In this document: positions 2,560 to 57,357 of the stretch, in pieces
How the letters are laid out: each line of letters starts with the position of its first letter
Position numbering within the stretch: position 1 is the stretch's first letter
IMG/VR virus record: IMGVR_UViG_3300043399_000877
Location: 317,887-381,886 of that record
Reading direction: 5' to 3' (one strand)
DNA: 64,000 nucleotides
Notes under the pieces: generated by a model
Told to the model about the DNA's origin: nothing
Seen by the model: the letters and a program-made list of their open reading frames with translations, nothing else
The model's database searches: none
Program-made: the position numbers and the translations under genes

Positions 2560-3291
2560 ATGGGTGCTAAGAAAGCCAGACGGCCATTAACCAATAACAA
2601 CACTAGTAACACTAATGTTGTAAAAATCAATAGTTATCTTCCAAAAAAGAGTCGAGATGTTAACATTTTACCTCGTAATAGAAGTCAAGAAACTTATATC
2701 CTAAAACTGTTGGATCCGGGTAAAGACATTGTCTTTGGGATTGGTCCAGCGGGAACCGGTAAGACTATGCTAGCCTGCCAGGTGGGAGTAAAATTGTTTC
2801 TAGAGGGGCAAATTGACCGCATCGTTGTTACACGTCCAGCAGTAAGTGCTGACGAAGATCTCGGATTTTTACCCGGGACACTGGAACAAAAGATGGCTCC
2901 TTGGACAAGACCTATTTTCGATGTGTTTAGAGAATACTTTTACGCAAACGAAATTGAGGGAATGATCCAGGAAGGCGTTATTGAAATTTCTCCATTAGCT
3001 TACATGCGTGGACGAACATTTAAGGATGCGTTTATTATCGCAGACGAAATGCAAAACGCGACACCCAACCAGATGAAGATGCTACTTACAAGAATCGGTA
3101 CCGGTTCAAAAATGGTTGTAACCGGCGACCTTGCTCAAGCAGACCGTCTTAAAGACAACGGTTTGATTGACTTCGTAAGCCATTTACGTGACTTTGAAGC
3201 TAACAGGATTGATGTTGTAAACTTCAGCCAACGCGATATCGAACGTCACGAAGCTGTAAAAGAAGTCCTCCAAGTATACGGAGACGAATAA
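2560..3291 (+). CDS. phoH: PhoH-like ATPase
   Basis: GPAGTGKT Walker A, LGFLPG, AYMRGRT, DEMQN and GDLAQ motifs. Confidence 0.95.
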   Translation: MGAKKARRPLTNNNTSNTNVVKINSYLPKKSRDVNILPRNRSQETYILKLLDPGKDIVFGIGPAGTGKTMLACQVGVKLFLEGQIDRIVVTRPAVSADEDLGFLPGTLEQKMAPWTRPIFDVFREYFYANEIEGMIQEGVIEISPLAYMRGRTFKDAFIIADEMQNATPNQMKMLLTRIGTGSKMVVTGDLAQADRLKDNGLIDFVSHLRDFEANRIDVVNFSQRDIERHEAVKEVLQVYGDE

Positions 3292-3315
3292 TTAAGGGGG
3301 CGCAAGCCCCCTTAA
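3292..3315. terminator. Bidirectional intrinsic terminator between convergent genes
   Basis: ttaagggggc-gcaa-gcccccttaa perfect hairpin with a GCAA loop. Confidence 0.85.
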
Positions 3316-3552
3316 TTACATTAACTCCAACATAGTTGAATATTTTTCGTCACTAAACCAAAGCAGAACTTGCAAGTGATTTGTGTGCCAATATACGGTT
3401 GAGTCGTTATTGAGTTTTTTGCACTTTGAAAGAACGTTCTGCATGTAAAGGCTCATTTCCCAACCTTTTTGAAAATCCCGCTTTACCGTAGGCGCCCCCA
3501 GCTTCATTTGTTCTTTAACAGTGAGGTCTGTAATTGATACCAAAAACATCAA
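3316..3552 (-). CDS. Small hypothetical protein, possible distant member of the 33-36 kb family
   Basis: Ends LLWFSDEKYSTMLELM. Confidence 0.55.
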   Translation of the reverse strand: MMFLVSITDLTVKEQMKLGAPTVKRDFQKGWEMSLYMQNVLSKCKKLNNDSTVYWHTNHLQVLLWFSDEKYSTMLELM

Positions 3553-40459: not shown

Positions 40460-41014
40460 TTACCAGACACTCCAGATGTGTTTTTTACCGAGATAGGTGT
40501 CGGGATAGGGAAGATAATCCCAGTCTTGATCTTTGAGGACACGACGTTCAAGCTGACGAACAGCGTTGCGAACAGTCTCTTTGCTGAGAGTTTTGTAAGC
40601 AGTGTTGCAGCCAGTTTCGTTGCCGTATCCGTCTCGAGTACGTTTTGCAAATTCGCGACGAGCCCAGTCACGTTCTGCTTCCCAATCAATGTCACAAGGT
40701 TCGTAACGGAACTTGCTAACATAATAACGATAACGTTCGGGCAATGCACGAACATAGCAACTGTACATAATGCTTTCGGGATTGTTCCAACAAAACCAAT
40801 AGTTTTTGCGGACTACCCGGCAGTCAGCTTCGTAACGTGCTTCTGCTGCTGCAACTTCGTGTTGGTATTCTTCCTGAGTTTTCTTCACTTTTTTACGGTG
40901 ATACATGCCAGGATATCTGGCGGCGCGAAGCGCCAGATCTTTTATATGCTCATCCACGTATTGAGATTCCGATTTGGAATGATCAAACTTGGGTTTACGG
41001 TACGTTCTACTCAT
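40460..41014 (-). CDS. Basic hypothetical protein (MSRTYRK N-terminus)
   Basis: SD TAAGGAG; Arg/Lys/Tyr-rich. Confidence 0.65.
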   Translation of the reverse strand: MSRTYRKPKFDHSKSESQYVDEHIKDLALRAARYPGMYHRKKVKKTQEEYQHEVAAAEARYEADCRVVRKNYWFCWNNPESIMYSCYVRALPERYRYYVSKFRYEPCDIDWEAERDWARREFAKRTRDGYGNETGCNTAYKTLSKETVRNAVRQLERRVLKDQDWDYLPYPDTYLGKKHIWSVW

Positions 41015-41086
41015 TTTGACTCCTTATAAGCTATTAGCTCATAAGTCGTCGTAAAACTTTCTGTATCTCATTTCGTTTCCTTTATT

Positions 41087-41191
41087 TGGTGGAGAGGGAT
41101 GGAATCGAACCATCGACGCGGCAAGTTACCAGCCTGCCCGCTCTACCCAGACCAACTTCAAGATTGGTGATCTTGCTGAGCTACCGTCTCC
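41087..41191 (-). tRNA. Aberrant tRNA-Thr(GGT)-like gene with an expanded D-loop
   Basis: T-arm GATGG-TTCGATT-CCATC, loop CTGGTAA, CCA; ~34-nt D-loop; bulged C in the acceptor stem. Confidence 0.7.
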
Positions 41192-41198
41192 GTTATTT

Positions 41199-41274
41199 TG
41201 GCGCCCCCGGCAGGAGTCGAACCCACAACCTAGGGAGTAGAAATCCCTTGCTCTTCCAGTTGAGCTACGAAGGC
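41199..41274 (-). tRNA. tRNA-Arg(TCT)
   Basis: Loop TTTCTAC; canonical arms; CCA. Confidence 0.92.
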
Positions 41275-41507
41275 ATGTCATTTAGTAATTCATTTAGAAC
41301 TGCGTCAACCAGTTCTTCTACGAACTCATCTTCTTCACTTGCGAGTACAAAATCGTCTGCACTCATAGTACCAACCACCCATGCATCCCAGTGCCGTGTG
41401 CAAAACATTGCATCAGACAAAGATTCTCTAACGCGGTCTCGGAGTCGCCGTTTTAACGGCTCCGACACAGTTGCAATCAGGGCACGTCGGTCAAGTGCAG
41501 TGGTCAC
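41265..41507 (-). CDS. Hypothetical protein
   Basis: CTRHWDAWVVGTMSADDF motif. Confidence 0.6.
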   Translation of the reverse strand: MTTALDRRALIATVSEPLKRRLRDRVRESLSDAMFCTRHWDAWVVGTMSADDFVLASEEDEFVEELVDAVLNELLNDMPS

Positions 41508-41947
41508 AACACGTAAACCACTGGTTCAACGTCAGTCATTTCATCTTCGATGATCTGACTGATAATGTTCCAATTCCCGCCGCCGAGCCCAGCACCGATT
41601 TGCGGCATAGCAACCTGCGTTTCACCACTTTGACGAAGAACGCTGTTGATGGTGCGCATACAATCAGCCACTGCTTCGTAGTTCACAAAACGACTACCGT
41701 CTCGACCATACAAATGCTGAGTAATTGCGTTGATGATTACTTTGCCATTTGAAGGTACAAACTGTACATCACCCAGCTTGAGGCCATGCTCGTCGTACTG
41801 CTCAACATAAAACCGGTATGCGTCAAAGTGGTCGTCACGAACTATACGTGCAACACCTGAACCCATAACGCCCTGGGCATTGCAACCGTGTGCAATGTGC
41901 AGGATGTCGGTCTCGAAAAGATTGCCCTTGCGGTATTGGATTTTCAT
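41504..41947 (-). CDS. Macro domain protein (ADP-ribose processing)
   Basis: GNLF, IAHGCNAQGVMGSGVA and PQIGAGLGGGNW motifs. Confidence 0.92.
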   Translation of the reverse strand: MKIQYRKGNLFETDILHIAHGCNAQGVMGSGVARIVRDDHFDAYRFYVEQYDEHGLKLGDVQFVPSNGKVIINAITQHLYGRDGSRFVNYEAVADCMRTINSVLRQSGETQVAMPQIGAGLGGGNWNIISQIIEDEMTDVEPVVYVL

Positions 41948-43387: not shown

Positions 43388-43465
43388 TGGAACTGGCTGG
43401 GGGATTTGAACCCGCCGCTACAAGATCCACAATCTTGTGTGCTAAACCGCTAACACTAAACCAGC
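43388..43465 (-). tRNA. tRNA-His(GTG)
   Basis: Loop TTGTGGA; no G at -1; G1-U72; CCA. Confidence 0.85.
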
Positions 43466-43677: not shown

Positions 43678-43748
43678 TGGTGCCCCCTGTAGGAATCGAA
43701 CCTACCGATCCGGGCTTAGGACGCCTGAGCCGGCCCAGCGGAGAGGGC
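43678..43748 (-). tRNA. tRNA-Arg(CCT) with a minimal D-arm
   Basis: 71 nt; D-arm GCTG-GGC-CGGC; loop GTCCTAA; canonical T-arm; CCA. Confidence 0.7.
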
Positions 43749-43754
43749 TAAATT

Positions 43755-43832
43755 TGGCGGATAAGGTTGGACTCGAACCAACAACGCAAGGCCTCAACCT
43801 GGCACCCGCTCTACCTCTTGAGCTACCGATCC
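43755..43832 (-). tRNA. Aberrant tRNA-Asn(GTT)-like gene
   Basis: Canonical D- and T-arms and GCCA end; irregular anticodon arm with loop AGGTTGA. Confidence 0.6.
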
Positions 43833-44178: not shown

Positions 44179-44484
44179 ATTATTTGGAAGATACGCTCGC
44201 TCTCCCAGCCAGGGCACTTTCGCTCCCCAACAAAAGCACAAGCGTATCATCGAAATAATGGTGAACCGGGTAGGATTTGAACCTACGTTGGCATTGCTGC
44301 TACAGATTAAAAGTCTGTCCCCATCGGCCTCTCGGGCACCGGTCCTAATGAATTCTGTGAAGTTTTGCTTTTCACGTTTGCGTTTCGATTTATATGGTTT
44401 ATCGTGTGCGCCCGCAACTCGAAACCGTGCTGCGGCCACAAACGGATTCCTCTGTTTAGGAATCTTCTGACGTTTTCGTTTCAT
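44140..44484 (-). CDS. Basic peptide ORF that runs without a stop codon into tRNA-Lys(TTT)
   Basis: MKRKRQKIPKQRNPFVAAARFRVAGAHDK...; SD AAGGA; only the first ~46 codons lie outside tRNA genes. Confidence 0.55.
   Translation of the reverse strand: MKRKRQKIPKQRNPFVAAARFRVAGAHDKPYKSKRKREKQNFTEFIRTGAREADGDRLLICSSNANVGSNPTRFTIISMIRLCFCWGAKVPWLGERAYLPNNAPVAQWSRAGSS
44259..44345 (-). tRNA. tRNA-Lys(TTT) with a class II (long variable arm) body
   Basis: ACAGA-CTTTTAA-TCTGT arm; variable region AGCAGCAATGCCAAC; CCA. Confidence 0.8.
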
Positions 44485-45769: not shown

Positions 45770-45868
45770 TTAACATCCGGTTCCACCTCCAGAGCGATTG
45801 CCAAAGCAATACTCACGACGCATTCTAATGCGCTCAATTTTATTGACATGTTTAAACATGGTGGTCAT
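45770..45868 (-). CDS. Leader peptide (32 aa) of the tRNA cluster
   Basis: MTTMFKHVNKIERIRMRREYCFGNRSGGGTGC between promoter and terminator; purine-rich upstream region; its 3' half is complementary to the terminator. Confidence 0.75.
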   Translation of the reverse strand: MTTMFKHVNKIERIRMRREYCFGNRSGGGTGC

Positions 45869-46269: not shown

Positions 46270-47166
46270 TCAATCCCTCGTTAGGTCATCAGCCAAGTTT
46301 ATTATTTTATCCAGCGCATACAATTGATCCCGCCAACCGGATCGTATCCCGCTGAGTCCATAGTATGCACCGGCAATCTGCCCGGTTACTGCTGCAACAG
46401 TGTCGGTATCATCTCCGAGGTTTGTGGCTAGCAACACGGCTTCATCAAAACTATCGGTATTATAAAAACACCAAATAGCTGCTTCCAACGTATCAATTAC
46501 ATATCCGCTGCTGCGAATATCGTTGCGCTTTCTTGACCACAGGTCCCGGTTGGTCATTTGCTTGACCTCGTCAGCCCAGTGTTCTGCGGGCTTGACAGCT
46601 AGTGCCGCCTCCTTGCTAGTAGCGTGTAGGGCGCGATGCAAGATGCTTGCTAGAAGCTCGCAGCTATGCACGGCAAGGCTGTATGCATGGGTTGTTTTGC
46701 TCTGCGCCGCCGCAATGCTCACAGCCAAATCTGGATCCTCGTGGTAATACAAAACCACCGGCGCCAGTCGCATTATACTGCCGTTTCCGCTGTAATTTCT
46801 ACTTGCATTGTTTTCAACAGCACCACGTTCTATAAAGTTTTCCAGAGCGTTAACAGTGGTCATCCCGATATCAAAACATACACCGGTACTGCTGTTGTGT
46901 CCACGAAGATACCAGTTTGTAAAACGATTTAATAGATCAACCGGTTGTAGACCGTCGCAGTCTCTCAAACTTTCGGCAAGGCAAAGAGCCATGCTGGTAT
47001 CATCGGTCCAGTATCCCACTGGCAAGTTGAACGGTCCGCCGCCCAGCATATCTGTAACCGGAGGATAACTGTCTCTCTTTTTAAATTCAACTGCGGCGCC
47101 CACAGCATCACCTACTGCAAGTCCCACAAGCATTCCACGAAGTCGATCTTTTAATTTTTCGTCCAT
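46270..47166 (-). CDS. ADP-ribosylglycohydrolase (DraG/ARH family)
   Basis: GLAVGDAVG, WTDDTSM, GNGSIMR and GDDTDTVAAVTG motifs. Confidence 0.95.
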   Translation of the reverse strand: MDEKLKDRLRGMLVGLAVGDAVGAAVEFKKRDSYPPVTDMLGGGPFNLPVGYWTDDTSMALCLAESLRDCDGLQPVDLLNRFTNWYLRGHNSSTGVCFDIGMTTVNALENFIERGAVENNASRNYSGNGSIMRLAPVVLYYHEDPDLAVSIAAAQSKTTHAYSLAVHSCELLASILHRALHATSKEAALAVKPAEHWADEVKQMTNRDLWSRKRNDIRSSGYVIDTLEAAIWCFYNTDSFDEAVLLATNLGDDTDTVAAVTGQIAGAYYGLSGIRSGWRDQLYALDKIINLADDLTRD

Positions 47167-53843: not shown

Positions 53844-54086
53844 TTATGTGTTTGTTTGTTCTTTAAGTTTGCGGCAACATACCACTGGCATACCAACCAC
53901 TTCAAGTTTTTCGTGATCGTATATATAGCCCGGTTTGTCGAGAATAACTAGGGCAATTGTTTTTGCGTAATCACCCCAGCCGCCGATCCGGCCTTGCATC
54001 CCATCCATACTGCTGGCAGTATGACAAAATTCAATGCGATCTCCGACTTTTGCCAGTTCCCCACGATCTCTGTCATATTTAAACAT
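53844..54086 (-). CDS. Hypothetical SH3-like protein
   Basis: DRDRGELAKVGDRI. Confidence 0.5.
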   Translation of the reverse strand: MFKYDRDRGELAKVGDRIEFCHTASSMDGMQGRIGGWGDYAKTIALVILDKPGYIYDHEKLEVVGMPVVCCRKLKEQTNT

Positions 54087-55231
54087 TAGTTGCCTCCTTT
54101 GAGCAAAAACTCGTTGCTGATAGTTTTGAAGCTGAAGCTCGGGTCTTCGTTACACTTCCAGACAAGACCTTCGCGGACCTTGTGGTTGATGCTCGGACCT
54201 TCTGCAAGAACAAGACCTTCTTCGACACTGACGGGTGCTTTCCAGTTAGTACCATGCAGCGGAACATGTTCAAGACCGATCATGTGGCAGACGCTGCGGC
54301 GTTCACCTGGAGCGAGGTATGTGTGCTTTGCAATATCAAAGATGTCGAACACAAAGAATCGATGTTCTTTGAAGCCTTCACGGTTACCTTGAATGCCCGG
54401 CCCCATGATTTCGCCCTGAAAAGCAAGACCATCCGGAATCCTATCGCCGATCTTCAGGGCCATAGCTACAAAGGTGTTGTCTTTGTTCTCTTCGTTGATC
54501 TTCAGTTCAAGGTTCCGGCTGCAAACACGAAGTTCGCCTTCCCAACGGAAGATCGTGCAGCTTGAGCCATCGAGCTTCATGGTGACTTCGTAAGTCGGCT
54601 CTTTGAAGTCTTCTGGCACGACGACCGGATGCTCTTCAAGAGTCTGAGTCTCGGCGTTCCAGACCTTCTCCGTAGCGAACCGCTTGGCCCGCTTTTGGAT
54701 GTCGCCAAAGCAGTTCTGAATCCGCTCCTGATCGGTCTTGGGAATCAGCGAAGTCGGGAACGTGCCAGCAGCTTGACCTTGAAGCTGAGCAGGAATAGGT
54801 GCTTCCCACTTCTGGATGCCAAGAATTTCAGTAAGATCGGTATCTACTTCAAACAGTCTAACTGGTTCAAGATCACCAAACTGAACATAACCTCCGGGAA
54901 GGTATTGAATAAACTGTTGTGGAAGTTCACGAACAGTTTCGTCAATCTTGAGTAGAAGCCCCTGCGAAACTTGTCCACGAAGCTTAATAGTCCGCAGACG
55001 TTCACCCTTGACACCGTTGTATTCACGAGGTTCTTGACCTTTCGAGAGGAATGGAGCAAGTTCATGAGGAACCCATGAGTCAATTTCTAGGTAGAGAGCA
55101 AGATCACCAACCTTGAACTCATCTTTCTTGACGACGACTTTCCAGCCGTCAACAGTGGCAACCACGATGGCGTCGGCGCCTTCAATAGGTTGAATGTCGG
55201 CGATACGCCGAATAGTGGCAAGTTTACGCAT
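54086..55231 (-). CDS. RNA ligase, DRB0094 family
   Basis: MRKLATIRRI, LRGQVSQGL, PKTDQERIQN, KLDGSS, QGEIMG, EGLVWK and FKTIS motifs. Confidence 0.93.
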   Translation of the reverse strand: MRKLATIRRIADIQPIEGADAIVVATVDGWKVVVKKDEFKVGDLALYLEIDSWVPHELAPFLSKGQEPREYNGVKGERLRTIKLRGQVSQGLLLKIDETVRELPQQFIQYLPGGYVQFGDLEPVRLFEVDTDLTEILGIQKWEAPIPAQLQGQAAGTFPTSLIPKTDQERIQNCFGDIQKRAKRFATEKVWNAETQTLEEHPVVVPEDFKEPTYEVTMKLDGSSCTIFRWEGELRVCSRNLELKINEENKDNTFVAMALKIGDRIPDGLAFQGEIMGPGIQGNREGFKEHRFFVFDIFDIAKHTYLAPGERRSVCHMIGLEHVPLHGTNWKAPVSVEEGLVLAEGPSINHKVREGLVWKCNEDPSFSFKTISNEFLLKGGN

Positions 55232-55589
55232 ATTTGTTCCTTCCGATTCCGGCAATGTCGTTAAGCATTTTTTCCTGTTCAGCCCACTTGAGTTGTTGAT
55301 CTACACGAATCTTCAAATAGTCACGAATCAGTTCTCTGTTATTCCAAATCCACTGTTCATAGCGAGCCAGCTTCTTGCAGCACTCTTCGCATTCTTCTAC
55401 GAAAGTATGTCCTTCGACTTCAACATATCGAAACCAACGACTGCTTTCCCACTCTTCTTCATCGTAGTCTTCGGGTGGGTTCCAATCGATACCGCAGTCA
55501 CAGTGTAACCATGCACTGTACCCACCGCGGCCGGCATCCCACATCATATCGCTTGCAATCCCATCTCGGGGCATGGTATATTGTGTCAT
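55224..55589 (-). CDS. Hypothetical Zn-binding protein
   Basis: CDCG...CEEC. Confidence 0.55.
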   Translation of the reverse strand: MTQYTMPRDGIASDMMWDAGRGGYSAWLHCDCGIDWNPPEDYDEEEWESSRWFRYVEVEGHTFVEECEECCKKLARYEQWIWNNRELIRDYLKIRVDQQLKWAEQEKMLNDIAGIGRNKYA

Positions 55590-55903: not shown

Positions 55904-56161
55904 TTAGTTCACTGGATACAGCACAACGCAACGAGGTTTGGCGAGTATTTCTGCCCATTCGTCCGGGCCCATATCCGCCTCGTCAGGTGTCCAATTCGTG
56001 CTGTATACACTGCCGTACCAAGTGGTTTCGGCAATGTATACACAGTTTTCATCAGCGCCCTCAAGCGGGCTGTACCCGTTGCCTTCGGCATCCTTTTGCA
56101 GGATTACTTCTGAGTCCGGGTCCATGGTTTGCAGTTGTTCAATAAGTTCAGATACTTTCAT
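55904..56161 (-). CDS. Conserved small phage protein
   Basis: MKVSELIEQL...QKDAEGNGYSPL motif. Confidence 0.65.
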   Translation of the reverse strand: MKVSELIEQLQTMDPDSEVILQKDAEGNGYSPLEGADENCVYIAETTWYGSVYSTNWTPDEADMGPDEWAEILAKPRCVVLYPVN

Positions 56162-57357
56162 TCCGTGATCTCCTGATTTTCAGATTCAATGCCCAGCCAT
56201 TGCGCACATTCCCGCCACTTGACGTTGGTGGTGATATGCTTGCGAATATGATCAAGAATCATTTCACGACCGTCACGGCCGCCAAAACGTCCGAATACAT
56301 ACTGCGGTGCAAAACTGTCGTTACCTTTGATAGTGGGCATCCACTCCTGCGCATAACGCTTGCGATCAAGACCGCTGGCTACCACAGTGTTCCAGTAACG
56401 CTCATAGCTTTCCACTGCCTTATGCAGTCGGTCACCAAACCGCTGAGCGAAGCTGTGAACACGATCGGCTTCATGCTGCGGCAGCATGGGCAGGACGTCG
56501 TCAATTTCTTCGTTCAGGATAAGGTCCACAATATGACGATCAAAGCGGATACGATCCACAGTCTTGTGAATGCGAACGTACCAATCGTTCTTGATCTTCA
56601 ACATATGCCCATCCGCAAAACGAATGATGTCACCTTCGCGTCCTTCTTGTTCGCGAGCGCGAGCAATGTAGTCGGTAAGGTTGCCTTCTACGCTGCCGTA
56701 TACCGGAACAATATTGAACGGAACATGACGATTGAACGGGACATACTCTCCGGTCAGATTGTCACGAATAGCAGTCAGGATCAGATCATCTTCTGCATAG
56801 TCGATAACAATCTGGTTCTTACGGCTGGTCCATTCAAAGATCGGAGTACGGTTGCCGGCCATCATAGCTTCGAGGAACATGAGTTTTTGGTCATAGTCCG
56901 GTTGTGCTACCAGCCAGGTTTCGGCGTTCATGGATACTTCGGTCACGCCCATTTTGGTGCCGAGGCGAATTTTGCCGCCAACATCAACCGGACGGATCAT
57001 GCTGCCGTCCAGCTTTTCCATAATCACATGCGGCTGACTCAGATCGATACGATTCATCTGAGTTTCTTCGCGTTCGTTCACGTTGAAGAACTTGTGGAAC
57101 GGACGGCTCATAATACGACCATCCGGATAGAAGATCAGTCCACGGCATTCACGACGCATGCGGTTGGTAAGCGATCGTTCGGCTCGCATCTTTGCACTTC
57201 CGCCTGCAACATTTACTGGAGGAAAAGTATCCTCCATGCTCACTGCATAGTTGATTACGGTACCGTAATCACGTTCGGCAATTACGAATTCTTCGCGACC
57301 TTCAATGTGAGGCAGCACGTCTTCAATGACGCGGATTTCAGGAAACTTGTAGTGCAT
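56158..57357 (-). CDS. RNA ligase, T4 Rnl1 family
   Basis: RECRGLIF, RPFHKFFN, EKLDGSM, EGDII and KIKNDWY motifs. Confidence 0.92.
   Translation of the reverse strand: MHYKFPEIRVIEDVLPHIEGREEFVIAERDYGTVINYAVSMEDTFPPVNVAGGSAKMRAERSLTNRMRRECRGLIFYPDGRIMSRPFHKFFNVNEREETQMNRIDLSQPHVIMEKLDGSMIRPVDVGGKIRLGTKMGVTEVSMNAETWLVAQPDYDQKLMFLEAMMAGNRTPIFEWTSRKNQIVIDYAEDDLILTAIRDNLTGEYVPFNRHVPFNIVPVYGSVEGNLTDYIARAREQEGREGDIIRFADGHMLKIKNDWYVRIHKTVDRIRFDRHIVDLILNEEIDDVLPMLPQHEADRVHSFAQRFGDRLHKAVESYERYWNTVVASGLDRKRYAQEWMPTIKGNDSFAPQYVFGRFGGRDGREMILDHIRKHITTNVKWRECAQWLGIESENQEITE

What the first reader, a model, noticed from the sequence alone, without database searches (positions are those of the whole stretch)
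41087..41191. tRNA-Thr(GGU)-like gene with a structured ~34-nt D-loop and a bulged acceptor stem
Seen: the D-loop reads AGCAAGAUCACCAAUCUUGAAGUUGGUCUGGGUA. It can form CAAGAU/AUCUUG with loop CACCA, or ACCAA/UUGGU, as alternatives or a pseudoknot. The acceptor GGAGA(C)GG/CCUCUCC has a bulged C and the anticodon stem is 6 bp. The leader peptide carries two ACC codons at positions 2-3, hinting that this RNA is counted as a Thr tRNA. Inference: either an armoured tRNA, a decoy showing a false ACCA loop, or a precursor whose insert is excised and sealed by the phage RNA ligases.
Basis: partly seen in the sequence, partly recalled or inferred. Interest (0 to 1): 0.65.

Follow-up and report, generated by a model that had tools for sequence, protein, structure and literature searches.

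The report
Phage tRNA-Thr-like RNA, structured D-loop insert
A giant phage encodes a conserved tRNA-shaped RNA with a threonine anticodon and an extra hairpin in its D-loop whose tip is complementary to the RNA's own anticodon loop, so it is a specialised tRNA derivative (perhaps built to withstand host attacks on tRNA), not a broken gene or an intron.

Summary
On the minus strand, 41191 to 41087, lies a 105-nt tRNA-like gene ending in CCA. It has a 34-nt D-loop, one bulged base in the 5' acceptor strand, a 6-bp anticodon stem and the loop CUGGUAA (anticodon GGU). ARAGORN and Rfam do not call it.

It is not a pseudogene. Four homologues in related jumbo-phage contigs keep all three oddities, and all 27 base pairs hold in all five sequences. 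The anticodon stem changes only by compensated substitutions; everything else is nearly invariant.

The insert has two alleles, each tied to one anticodon-loop allele. Loop C-ACCA goes with CUGGUAA. Loop UUAGCC-G goes with the 8-nt loop UUGGCUAA/G. In both alleles the insert loop is Watson-Crick complementary to the anticodon loop (4 and 6 bp; joint chance about 7e-5). It can also pair, less convincingly, with a nearby UGGU in the D-loop as a pseudoknot.

The "false ACCA end" reading is refuted, the intron and leader-peptide readings are unsupported, and the "armoured tRNA" reading stays viable.

My best reading is a retained, structured module on a tRNA-Thr-derived RNA that carries its own codon mimic and probably pairs with anticodon loops in trans. 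It plausibly serves in phage-host conflict over tRNAs. The function itself is inferred, not shown.

The parts
41087..41191 (-). Whole 105-nt tRNA-Thr(GGU)-like gene (element A), CCA encoded
   Evidence: Sequence. Homologues in L070, L010, L008 and L024. Covariance model R1 scores 122-129 bits for the five and 62 or less for ordinary tRNAs.
41184..41191 (-). 5' acceptor strand GGAGACGG (8 nt against 7 on the 3' side); the bulged base is C at 41186
   Evidence: The extra base is present in all five members: C in four, A in L010. The seven flanking pairs are invariant.
41159..41175 (-). Insert hairpin CAAGAU / AUCUUG with loop CACCA (loop at 41165-41169), inserted after A14-G15 of the D-loop
   Evidence: Identical in W, L070 and L010. 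The second allele (GAGAU-UUAGCCG-AUCUU) is found in L008 and L024. The hairpin is kept in both. Covariation in its stem depends on the alignment register (see the report).
41151..41154 (-). UGGU inside the D-loop (RNA 38-41), possible pseudoknot partner of the insert loop; the preceding 4-nt linker (41155-41158) varies
   Evidence: Invariant in all five members, whereas the linker before it varies (AAGU, UAGA, AGGU).
41144..41150 (-). CUGGGUA, the remainder of a normal D-loop (candidate G18 G19 ... A21)
   Evidence: Invariant in the five members. GGUA before GAGC is also kept in the distant kin.
41140..41143 (-). 3' strand of the D stem (GAGC); its partner GCUC is at 41178-41181
   Evidence: Invariant. 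It is the same D arm as in ordinary phage tRNA-Phe genes that share this core.
41120..41138 (-). Anticodon arm: 6-bp stem GGCAGG/CUUGCC and 7-nt loop CUGGUAA; anticodon GGU at 41128-41130
   Evidence: The 6-bp length is kept in all five members. Five of the six pairs show changes on both sides. The loop is invariant within each allele.
41098..41119 (-). Variable loop GCGUC (41115-41119) and canonical T arm GAUGG-UUCGAUU-CCAUC (41098-41114)
   Evidence: The variable loop is invariant. One T-stem pair (50-64) covaries: A-U, U-A, G-C.
41087..41097 (-). 3' acceptor strand CCUCUCC, discriminator A, CCA
   Evidence: Invariant in all five members.
41199..41274 (-). tRNA-Arg(UCU), 7 nt upstream on the same strand; probable co-transcript
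   Evidence: ARAGORN and Rfam. The same tRNA-Arg precedes the element in L024 and L070.

Best explanation
This is a real, selectively maintained phage gene for a tRNA-Thr(GGU)-derived RNA. It is probably transcribed with the tRNA-Arg(UCU) gene 7 nt upstream and trimmed like a tRNA.

The whole tRNA core is kept: U8, A14, G15 with C48, the D stem, a GG...A D-loop remainder, the 5-nt variable loop, the T arm and the encoded CCA. Three expansions are fixed on that core: one bulged base in the 5' acceptor strand, a sixth pair in the anticodon stem, and a 24-25-nt module at D-loop position 16/17.

The module is retained in the mature RNA. It forms a 5-6-bp hairpin whose loop carries the codon for the RNA's own anticodon (ACC followed by A in the window).

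A single L-shaped molecule cannot bring the two loops together. The loop may alternate with a local pseudoknot on the neighbouring UGGU. Either state buries or remodels the two surfaces that anticodon-directed host effectors read: the anticodon arm and D-loop 16/17.

The RNA would then be a self-shielding ('armoured') tRNA or tRNA mimic used in the phage-host conflict over tRNAs.

Shown: existence, conservation, secondary structure, and coupling of the two loops. Inferred: pairing in trans, retention of the insert, processing, and the biological role.
For: Structure and selection. Five members keep 27 of 27 pairs, 100% of cells paired. Ten pairs show changes on both sides, and 0 of 500 shuffles reach the observed covariation score. 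Differences are confined to the anticodon stem (4-9 of 12 positions in every pairwise comparison, all compensated), one T-stem pair, the bulged base and a 4-nt linker. The acceptor, D stem, variable loop and 3' end are invariant.

Coupling of the loops. There are two insert alleles, 0 of 17 differences within an allele and 12 of 17 between them. They are strictly tied to the two anticodon-loop alleles. ACCA pairs with UGGU (4 Watson-Crick pairs) and UUAGCC with GGCUAA (6 Watson-Crick pairs). The extra C in the anticodon loop is matched by an extra G in the insert loop. Chance levels for random loops are 0.054 and 0.0013. Cognate loop duplexes give -4.3 and -8.0 kcal/mol, against -2.9 and -3.7 for cross pairs.

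Direction of change. L010 is an outgroup (shared HAD protein 71-73% identical, against 95% for L024) and carries the window's allele. Both loops therefore changed together within a close group of phages.

Context. The gene lies in a tRNA cluster in which every tRNA encodes CCA. The window holds T4 Rnl1-like and Rnl2-like RNA ligases, a macro-domain gene two genes upstream and an ADP-ribosylglycohydrolase.

Precedent. AriB of PARIS reads the 3' strand of the anticodon stem and D-loop U16-U17, and T5 tRNA-Lys escapes by changes at exactly those places (PMC12409363). The anticodon loop of tRNA-Thr(GGU) is itself the target of an ADP-ribosylating toxin (PMC13617354).
Against: There are only five sequences and two loop alleles, so the loop-loop covariation rests on one evolutionary switch and was noticed after the fact.

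The insert loop is also complementary to the D-loop UGGU: 5 Watson-Crick pairs in the window (p 0.018), and 6 pairs including 3 G-U in the other allele (p 0.10). Because the D-loop segment and the anticodon loop both contain UGG, part of the signal is shared between the two models.

Intramolecular kissing is excluded only by reasoning from standard tRNA geometry, not by a model.

More distant D-loop-insert kin (L010_B, two in L022, L023) show no such complementarity.

There are no expression, dimerisation, charging or nuclease data, and the host is unknown. The element is missing from several close relatives (L003/L014-17, L005, L013, L025), so it is dispensable. The anticodon stem does not evolve demonstrably faster than neutral, so an arms race is not shown.
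Confidence: 0.42

Rival explanations
1. It is an ordinary decoding tRNA-Thr(GGU) that reads ACC and ACU for the phage. The D-loop module is a self-contained H-type pseudoknot (hairpin plus loop ACCA paired with the neighbouring UGGU) that sticks out of the elbow. It is either neutral or blocks host enzymes that read D-loop 16/17. Complementarity to the anticodon loop is a side effect, because both segments contain UGG.
For: The window's anticodon loop is canonical: C32, U33, GGU, A37, A38. The T arm, variable loop and CCA are canonical. No other tRNA-Thr lies in the window. ACU plus ACC make up 65% of Thr codons in 54 window ORFs. The UGGU is invariant while the linker in front of it varies, as expected for a pseudoknot loop. 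The window's insert loop pairs slightly better with this segment than with the anticodon loop, -5.7 against -4.3 kcal/mol.
Against: L008 and L024 have an 8-nt anticodon loop with no Thr anticodon yet keep everything else. The extra base pair in the anticodon stem and the acceptor bulge are unusual for an elongator tRNA. The 2-71 pair is G-C, not the C-G that is a ThrRS identity element in E. coli; this is from my own knowledge, and the role of acceptor pairs and anticodon in Thr identity is stated in PMC9976931. In the second allele the pseudoknot needs G-U pairs at both ends and is not above chance (p 0.10). Three further loop bases match the anticodon loop but not the D-loop segment.
Confidence: 0.25
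2. It is a non-decoding tRNA mimic that acts as a decoy or sponge. Its tRNA-shaped body and anticodon arm bind a host factor, such as a defence tRNase, an ADP-ribosyltransferase, ThrRS or a modification enzyme, and titrate it. The two loops track that third party rather than each other.
For: The family tolerates a non-canonical anticodon loop. Sister RNAs with the same D-arm core and a D-loop insert have no usable anticodon loop at all: a tetraloop in L010_B, and 6-, 8- and 9-nt loops in L022 and L023. These phages carry several other RNAs that have an acceptor stem, T arm and CCA around an odd middle. Anticodon-arm mimicry that binds ThrRS is known from the thrS operator (PMC9976931).
Against: A decoy should copy the target's recognition features. 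Here they are altered: a 6-bp stem and an insert at position 16/17. The 8-nt loop mimics no natural tRNA. There is no conserved protein partner next to the element across the five loci.
Confidence: 0.17
3. It is a precursor whose D-loop insert is cut out and whose halves are sealed by the phage RNA ligases, leaving a normal tRNA-Thr.
For: Two RNA ligase genes lie 13-16 kb away in the window. Deleting 24 nt in silico leaves a D-loop of normal size.
Against: There is no bulge-helix-bulge at the junctions (by inspection of the sequence) and no intron or ribozyme family hit, even at E up to 10. The insert is far too small for a self-splicing intron. It is invariant in sequence within each allele, while the neighbouring anticodon stem drifts. 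Removing it would not cure the bulged acceptor stem or the 6-bp anticodon stem. The ligases have a well-known role in repairing anticodon-nuclease damage (own knowledge of T4 Pnk/Rnl1).
Confidence: 0.03
4. It is a decaying tRNA pseudogene with a chance insertion and has no function.
For: tRNA finders reject it. The window holds other degenerate-looking tRNAs, for example an Asn tRNA without U33. The element is absent from several close relatives.
Against: Every base pair is maintained in five phages through compensated changes, the rest of the sequence is invariant, and the oddities themselves are conserved in an outgroup phage.
Confidence: 0.05

Closest known systems
[quoted passage not shown]
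   Same: Both are phage-encoded tRNA paralogues in a tRNA cluster. The departures from the normal tRNA lie in the anticodon stem and at D-loop 16/17, the sites AriB reads.
   Different: The T5 tRNAs are canonical cloverleaves with point substitutions and are proven decoders. Here there is a 24-25-nt structured insert, an extra stem pair and an acceptor bulge, and one allele has an 8-nt loop. Resistance and decoding are untested.
   Same: One RNA carries two hairpin loops that are complementary to each other over 4-6 nt, cannot meet within one molecule, and co-vary between related phages.
   Different: There is no sequence or fold similarity to pRNA and no Rfam hit. The scaffold here is a tRNA. 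Multimerisation is only inferred, and there is no link to DNA packaging.
T-box Stem I specifier loop and the thrS operator (codon-like or anticodon-like loops that address tRNA or ThrRS)
   Same: A structured RNA presents a codon-like triplet in a loop that can pair with an anticodon.
   Different: Those are cis-regulatory mRNA leaders. This is a free-standing tRNA-shaped RNA with its own CCA end. No T-box family hit was found.
tRNA-Sec and tRNA-Pyl
   Same: They have a 6-bp anticodon stem in a functional tRNA.
   Different: Those compensate elsewhere (8/5 or 9/4 acceptor/T geometry, a long or 3-nt variable region, a small D-loop) and read stop codons. None of that applies here, and there is no tRNA-Sec hit in this region.
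Stable tRNA-like RNAs of unknown function in phage tRNA clusters (T4 species 1 and 2 RNAs, rnaC/rnaD; recalled, not tested)
   Same: They are small CCA-ended RNAs encoded among phage tRNA genes and shaped for tRNA processing enzymes.
   Different: No sequence relation was tested. The present family has a full cloverleaf plus a defined insert.

Membership tests
Canonical elongator tRNA (Rfam RF00005 / ARAGORN cloverleaf) | Recognised by tRNA covariance model or gene finder at the family threshold | tested here: not met
   There is no ARAGORN call, even at a relaxed threshold. There is no RF00005 hit at gathering score or at E up to 10.
Canonical elongator tRNA (Rfam RF00005 / ARAGORN cloverleaf) | 7-bp acceptor stem without a bulge, D-loop of about 7-11 nt, 5-bp anticodon stem | tested here: not met
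   The element has 8 nt against 7 nt in the acceptor stem, a 34-nt D-loop and a 6-bp anticodon stem. All three are conserved in the five members.
Canonical elongator tRNA (Rfam RF00005 / ARAGORN cloverleaf) | 7-nt anticodon loop with U33 and purine 37; T arm with UUCGAnU loop; 5-nt variable loop; core bases U8, A14, G15/C48, GG...A21; 3' CCA | tested here: met
   All are present in the window element. The 7-nt loop is replaced by an 8-nt loop in L008 and L024.
Canonical elongator tRNA (Rfam RF00005 / ARAGORN cloverleaf) | Aminoacylated and used by the ribosome | not testable with these tools
   This needs charging and translation assays.
Intron-containing tRNA (archaeal bulge-helix-bulge type or group I) | Bulge-helix-bulge at the exon-intron junctions, or a group I catalytic core | tested here: not met
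   No 3-nt bulges flanking a 4-bp helix can be drawn at the insert borders (by inspection). There is no intron or ribozyme family hit at E up to 10. The insert is only 24-25 nt.
Intron-containing tRNA (archaeal bulge-helix-bulge type or group I) | Removal of the insert yields a canonical tRNA | tested here: not met
   After in-silico deletion, the bulged acceptor stem and the 6-bp anticodon stem remain.
tmRNA / tRNA-like domain | Score above the family threshold, tag reading frame, pseudoknots | tested here: not met
   Only the acceptor stem and T arm match, at 17.2 bits against a cut-off of 47. ARAGORN reports no tmRNA.
tRNA-Sec / tRNA-Pyl | 6-bp anticodon stem together with 8/5 or 9/4 acceptor/T geometry, or a compacted core, and a stop-codon anticodon | tested here: not met
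   The 6-bp stem is present. However, the geometry is 7/5, the variable loop is normal, the anticodon is GGU, and there is no tRNA-Sec hit in this region.
   ACCA pairs with UGGU, and UUAGCC pairs with GGCUAA. The alleles are strictly coupled. Only two alleles are known.
   There is no Rfam hit to pRNA or any other non-tRNA family. Oligomerisation is not testable here. This is a resemblance in mechanism only, not membership.
Defence-evading phage tRNAs (T5 versus PARIS type) | Differs from the targeted host tRNA at the positions the effector reads (3' strand of the anticodon stem, D-loop 16-17) | tested here: inconclusive
   The structural departures lie at those two places (PMC12409363). However, the host and its tRNA-Thr are unknown, so no direct comparison is possible.
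Defence-evading phage tRNAs (T5 versus PARIS type) | Resists cleavage or modification and rescues infection | not testable with these tools
   This needs nuclease or ADP-ribosyltransferase assays and phage genetics.

The most novel reading that the evidence does not exclude
This would be a new class of phage RNA: a tRNA-shaped molecule that carries, in a D-loop hairpin, the codon for its own anticodon. Copies would link anticodon-to-codon into dimers or chains. That would hide the anticodon loop and the D-loop 16/17 surface from anticodon nucleases and ADP-ribosylating toxins, or trap those enzymes. The loop pair could drift to non-natural sequences (an 8-nt loop with a 4-base match) because only mutual complementarity is selected.
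Probability: 0.3. Interest if true: 0.85.

Novelty: new variant of a known kind. Interest (0 to 1): 0.63.

Why it matters
tRNAs have recently emerged as a main battleground between bacteria and phages: PrrC, PARIS, retrons, Schlafen-like nucleases and ADP-ribosylating toxins all attack them. The counter-measures known so far are tRNA repair and point-mutated phage tRNAs.

A conserved tRNA derivative with a built-in structured module at the D-loop and a self-complementary codon loop would be a new kind of counter-measure, or a new kind of tRNA mimic. It would also show that tRNA gene finders systematically miss a class of functional phage RNAs. In these contigs several other RNAs with an acceptor stem, T arm and CCA went uncalled.

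It is directly testable with a 105-nt transcript.

Tried and rejected
**Searches that found nothing**
- GenBank phages: blastn found nothing for the element or for a distant kin. tblastn found nothing for the downstream 184-aa protein.
- Exact scans of IMG/VR for the 3' half, the anticodon arm and the insert returned only the source contig.
- A scan of 185,579 bacterial and archaeal genomes for the same D arm with a 15-45-nt insert gave three chance hits with no tRNA features. L011 and L012 from IMG/VR were also chance hits inside coding sequence.

**Look-ups that added no further members**
- Context look-ups for seven more homologues of the 184-aa protein gave no element.
- A look-up for an abundant HAD homologue gave no element either.

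**Pairings that were not conserved**
- Extended pairing between the insert stem and the anticodon stem is strong in L008 (-18.9 kcal/mol) and in the window (-12.8), weaker in L010 (-7.7), and by eye is lost in L070. Only the loops matter.
- The alternative D stem GCUCAG/CUGGGU is preferred by the energy model. It is invariant and therefore untestable, and it is not kept in distant kin, so I kept the canonical D stem.

**Other checks that led nowhere**
- Ancestry: the core shared with distant kin is that of ordinary phage tRNA-Phe(GAA) genes. The closest tRNA in the window is an atypical Asn tRNA, not Phe. No firm parent was identified.
- Diversifying selection on the anticodon stem: 5 of 12 positions differ between the window and L070, whose flanking protein is 93% identical. 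That is not clearly above neutral, so it is not claimed.
- Literature searches found no description of D-loop-insert tRNA-like RNAs in phages.

Full report
**1. What is there**

The window is part of IMG/VR contig IMGVR_UViG_3300043399_000877, a 381,886-bp jumbo phage. Nearly all genes lie on the minus strand. Positions 36.5-45.5 kb hold a cluster of at least 16 tRNA genes, all with an encoded CCA.

The finding lies on the minus strand from 41191 to 41087, 7 nt downstream of tRNA-Arg(UCU) (41199-41274). Read as RNA it is a cloverleaf with these parts:
- an acceptor stem of 7 pairs with one extra base (C, at 41186) in the 5' strand;
- U8 and A9;
- the D stem GCUC/GAGC;
- a 34-nt D-loop;
- G26;
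- a 6-bp anticodon stem GGCAGG/CUUGCC;
- the loop CUGGUAA (anticodon GGU at 41128-41130);
- the variable loop GCGUC;
- a textbook T arm;
- discriminator A, then CCA.

ARAGORN and the Rfam tRNA model do not call it. The fold energy of the single sequence is not unusual (z = -1.3). The sequence alone therefore cannot say whether it is functional.

**2. Relatives**

GenBank phages hold nothing similar. The nearest cultured phages, found through the macro-domain protein, are RaK2/121Q-like jumbo phages at about 42-45% identity. Exact scans of IMG/VR returned only the source contig. Anchoring on neighbouring proteins, and on a pattern made of the D arm plus a gap, gave four homologues:

| Locus | Position | Source | How close |
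|---|---|---|---|
| L024 | 2096-2201 | not recorded | same synteny (macro gene, 80-aa gene, tRNA-Arg, element); 184-aa protein 80% identical |
| L008 | 2811-2916 | metagenome | 184-aa protein 84% identical |
| L070 | 521-625 | not recorded | 80-aa protein 93% identical |
| L010 | 3270-3374, minus strand | IMG/VR | more distant phage; shared HAD protein 71-73% identical, against 95% for L024 |

Other close relatives lack the element:
- L003, L007, L009 and L014-17 have a different CCA-ended RNA of about 109 nt at that spot.
- L005 has nothing after tRNA-Arg.
- L013 and L026 have no tRNAs there.
- L025 has yet another odd tRNA-like RNA.

So the gene is real but accessory.

**3. Evidence for selection on the structure**

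I used the five-sequence alignment (A3) and the cloverleaf plus insert hairpin, 27 pairs in all.
- 100% of 135 cells are standard pairs.
- Ten pairs show changes on both sides.
- None of 500 shuffles reaches the observed covariation score.
- Sliding the partners by 1-3 columns drops pairing to 41-55%.

By region, the following are invariant: the acceptor with its bulge position, the D stem, the last 11 nt of the D-loop, the variable loop, the T loop and the 3' end. The anticodon stem differs at 4-9 of 12 positions in every pairwise comparison, always compensated and always 6 bp long. One T-stem pair covaries. The bulged base is C in four members and A in L010.

A covariance model built from four members scores the fifth at 128.7 bits and ordinary tRNAs at 62 bits or less. 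This rules out a decaying pseudogene.

One caveat applies. The four 'double changes' in the insert stem depend on the ungapped alignment. If the second allele is shifted by one base, the stems are simply homologous (AAGAU/AUCUU against GAGAU/AUCUU) and the loop grows from 5 to 7 nt. The hairpin is kept either way, but its support is conservation rather than covariation.

**4. The insert and its partner**

The insert comes in two discrete alleles:
- W, L070 and L010 have the loop C-ACCA.
- L008 and L024 have the loop UUAGCC-G.

The alleles are strictly coupled to the anticodon loop. The first goes with CUGGUAA. The second goes with an 8-nt loop, UUGGCUAA or UUGGCUAG.

In both alleles the insert loop is Watson-Crick complementary to the anticodon loop of the same RNA: ACCA with UGGU, and UUAGCC with GGCUAA. 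In other words, the extra C in the anticodon loop is matched by an extra G in the insert loop. For random 7-mers the chance levels are 0.054 and 0.0013. Cognate loop duplexes are more stable than cross-allele ones, -4.3 and -8.0 against -2.9 and -3.7 kcal/mol. Because L010 is an outgroup and has the window's allele, both loops changed together inside a close group of phages in which the rest of the RNA did not change.

A second possible partner is the invariant UGGU inside the D-loop (RNA 38-41, window 41151-41154), four bases after the hairpin. It fits the window well (5 Watson-Crick pairs, p 0.018; -5.7 kcal/mol). It fits the second allele only with G-U pairs (p 0.10; -5.3 against -8.7 kcal/mol for the anticodon loop). 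The variable 4-nt linker is what a pseudoknot loop would look like.

The two partners share the UGG core, so part of the signal is common to both. Three further bases of the second allele match only the anticodon loop. I rate anticodon-loop pairing as the better supported, and I cannot exclude the pseudoknot or an alternation between the two.

Pairing of the two loops within one L-shaped molecule is unlikely. The hairpin leaves the core right after G15, and the anticodon lies some 55-60 Å away. This is an inference from standard tRNA geometry, not something I computed. Pairing would therefore be between molecules, as in phi29 pRNA.

Pairing that extends into the stems is not conserved.

**5.

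The 'false ACCA end' reading fails, because the second allele has no ACCA.

The 'excised insert' reading has nothing in its favour:
- There is no bulge-helix-bulge.
- There is no intron or ribozyme hit at E up to 10.
- The insert is frozen in sequence within each allele.
- Excision would still leave a bulged acceptor and a 6-bp anticodon stem.

The two RNA ligases in the window, Rnl1-like at 56158-57357 and Rnl2-like at 54086-55255, fit the classical role of repairing anticodon-nuclease cuts.

The 'armoured tRNA' reading is compatible with the data, and published work gives it a concrete precedent:
- AriB of PARIS cuts the 3' strand of the anticodon stem and holds D-loop U16-U17. T5 tRNA-Lys escapes through U39A, A41C and U16C (PMC12409363).
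- The anticodon of tRNA-Thr(GGU) is itself the target of an ADP-ribosylating toxin (PMC13617354).

The element departs from a normal tRNA at those same two places. A macro-domain gene lies two genes upstream, and an ADP-ribosylglycohydrolase lies 5 kb away. This proximity may be coincidental.

The 'leader peptide' (45770-45868) is far away and not conserved.

**6. Decoder or not**

For decoding:
- The anticodon loop in the window is canonical.
- The tRNA core and CCA are complete.
- There is no other tRNA-Thr in the window.
- ACU plus ACC account for 65% of Thr codons.

Against decoding:
- The conserved extra stem pair and acceptor bulge are unusual for a decoder.
- The 2-71 pair is G-C. E. 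coli ThrRS prefers C2-G71, which I recall from my own knowledge. The general role of acceptor pairs and anticodon in Thr identity is in PMC9976931.
- The sister allele has an 8-nt loop that matches no identity set.
- More distant RNAs with the same D-arm core and a D-loop insert have no usable anticodon loop. These are L010 3155-3263, L022 5699-5792 and 5965-6064, and L023 565-674.

The one property conserved across both alleles is the mutual fit of the two loops. That is why I put the self-pairing, shielding model first (0.42) and the plain decoder with a pseudoknot second (0.25).

**7. Comparison with known systems and novelty**

In mechanism it resembles the defence-evading tRNAs of T5 and, for the loop pair, phi29 pRNA. 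It is a member of neither (see the membership table). It is tRNA-derived, and its core is shared with ordinary phage tRNA-Phe genes.

I found no description of such RNAs in the literature, and none in 185,579 prokaryotic genomes for this D arm. I class it as a new variant of a known kind: phage tRNA or tRNA mimic. If intermolecular anticodon-codon pairing is confirmed, it would be more than that.

**8. Limits**

There are five sequences, two loop alleles, no expression data and an unknown host.

Noticed in passing
L003 1558-1666; same in L007, L009, L014-L017; L008 2922-3027: A second CCA-ended RNA of about 106-109 nt ('element B') with an acceptor-like stem (GCUGGG/CCCGGC). The L008 copy also has a clear T arm. 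It sits where element A sits in the window, and in L008 it follows A in tandem. Neither ARAGORN nor Rfam calls it.
   Followed up: partly
L010 minus strand 3155-3263, 3057-3148 and 2889-2968: Three further uncalled tRNA-like RNAs lie in one cluster. One has the same D arm as element A, a 44-nt D-loop, and a 5-bp stem with a tetraloop in place of the anticodon arm. Its insert contains a near direct copy of that stem-loop.
   Followed up: partly
L022 5699-5792 and 5965-6064 (368-kb phage); L023 565-674 (618-kb phage): These are D-loop-insert tRNA-like RNAs in unrelated huge phages. Their anticodon-position loops are 6, 8 or 9 nt long. Both L022 copies have tandem G-A/A-G mismatches at acceptor pairs 4-69 and 5-68.
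   Followed up: no
window 44259-44345 (-); L010 5136-5222 (-): This tRNA-Lys(UUU) is 87 nt long, with a long variable arm and a class II-like D arm. That is unusual for Lys, whose tRNA is a known target of PrrC and PARIS.
   Followed up: no
window 43755-43832 (-), 43678-43748 (-) and 43391-43465 (-): The tRNA-Asn(GUU) has G instead of U33 and mismatches in the acceptor and anticodon stems (Rfam 35 bits). The tRNA-Arg(CCU) is 71 nt with a 3-bp D stem. A tRNA-like hit seen only by Rfam has no CCA.
   Followed up: partly
window 41039-41071 (-): A 10-codon upstream ORF (MRYRKFYDDL) lies directly before the 184-aa gene at 40460-41014. It is conserved in L003, L008, L024 and L025, and in altered form (MQTPWEFYDDM) in L013 and L026. 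It may be a translational leader.
   Followed up: partly
window 54086-55255, 56158-57357, 41504-41947 and 46270-47166 (all -): An Rnl2/PHA02142-like RNA ligase, a T4 Rnl1-like RNA ligase, a macro-domain protein and an ADP-ribosylglycohydrolase all lie close to the tRNA cluster. Together they look like a toolkit for RNA repair and removal of ADP-ribose.
   Followed up: partly
L046 7567-7699 (-): A 133-nt tRNA-like gene has a normal D arm and an insertion of about 60 nt at the anticodon-loop position.
   Followed up: no
L029 and L034; L052 and L062; L054 873-945: These genes have a tRNA-Phe-type core with shortened anticodon arms: 4-bp stems and odd loops. Some lack a matching acceptor stem.
   Followed up: no
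L005 6664-6735; L025 about 1425-1500: An odd tRNA of about 72 nt, called Leu(GAG) by ARAGORN, lies directly before tRNA-Arg(UCU) in two relatives. It is absent from the window.
   Followed up: no
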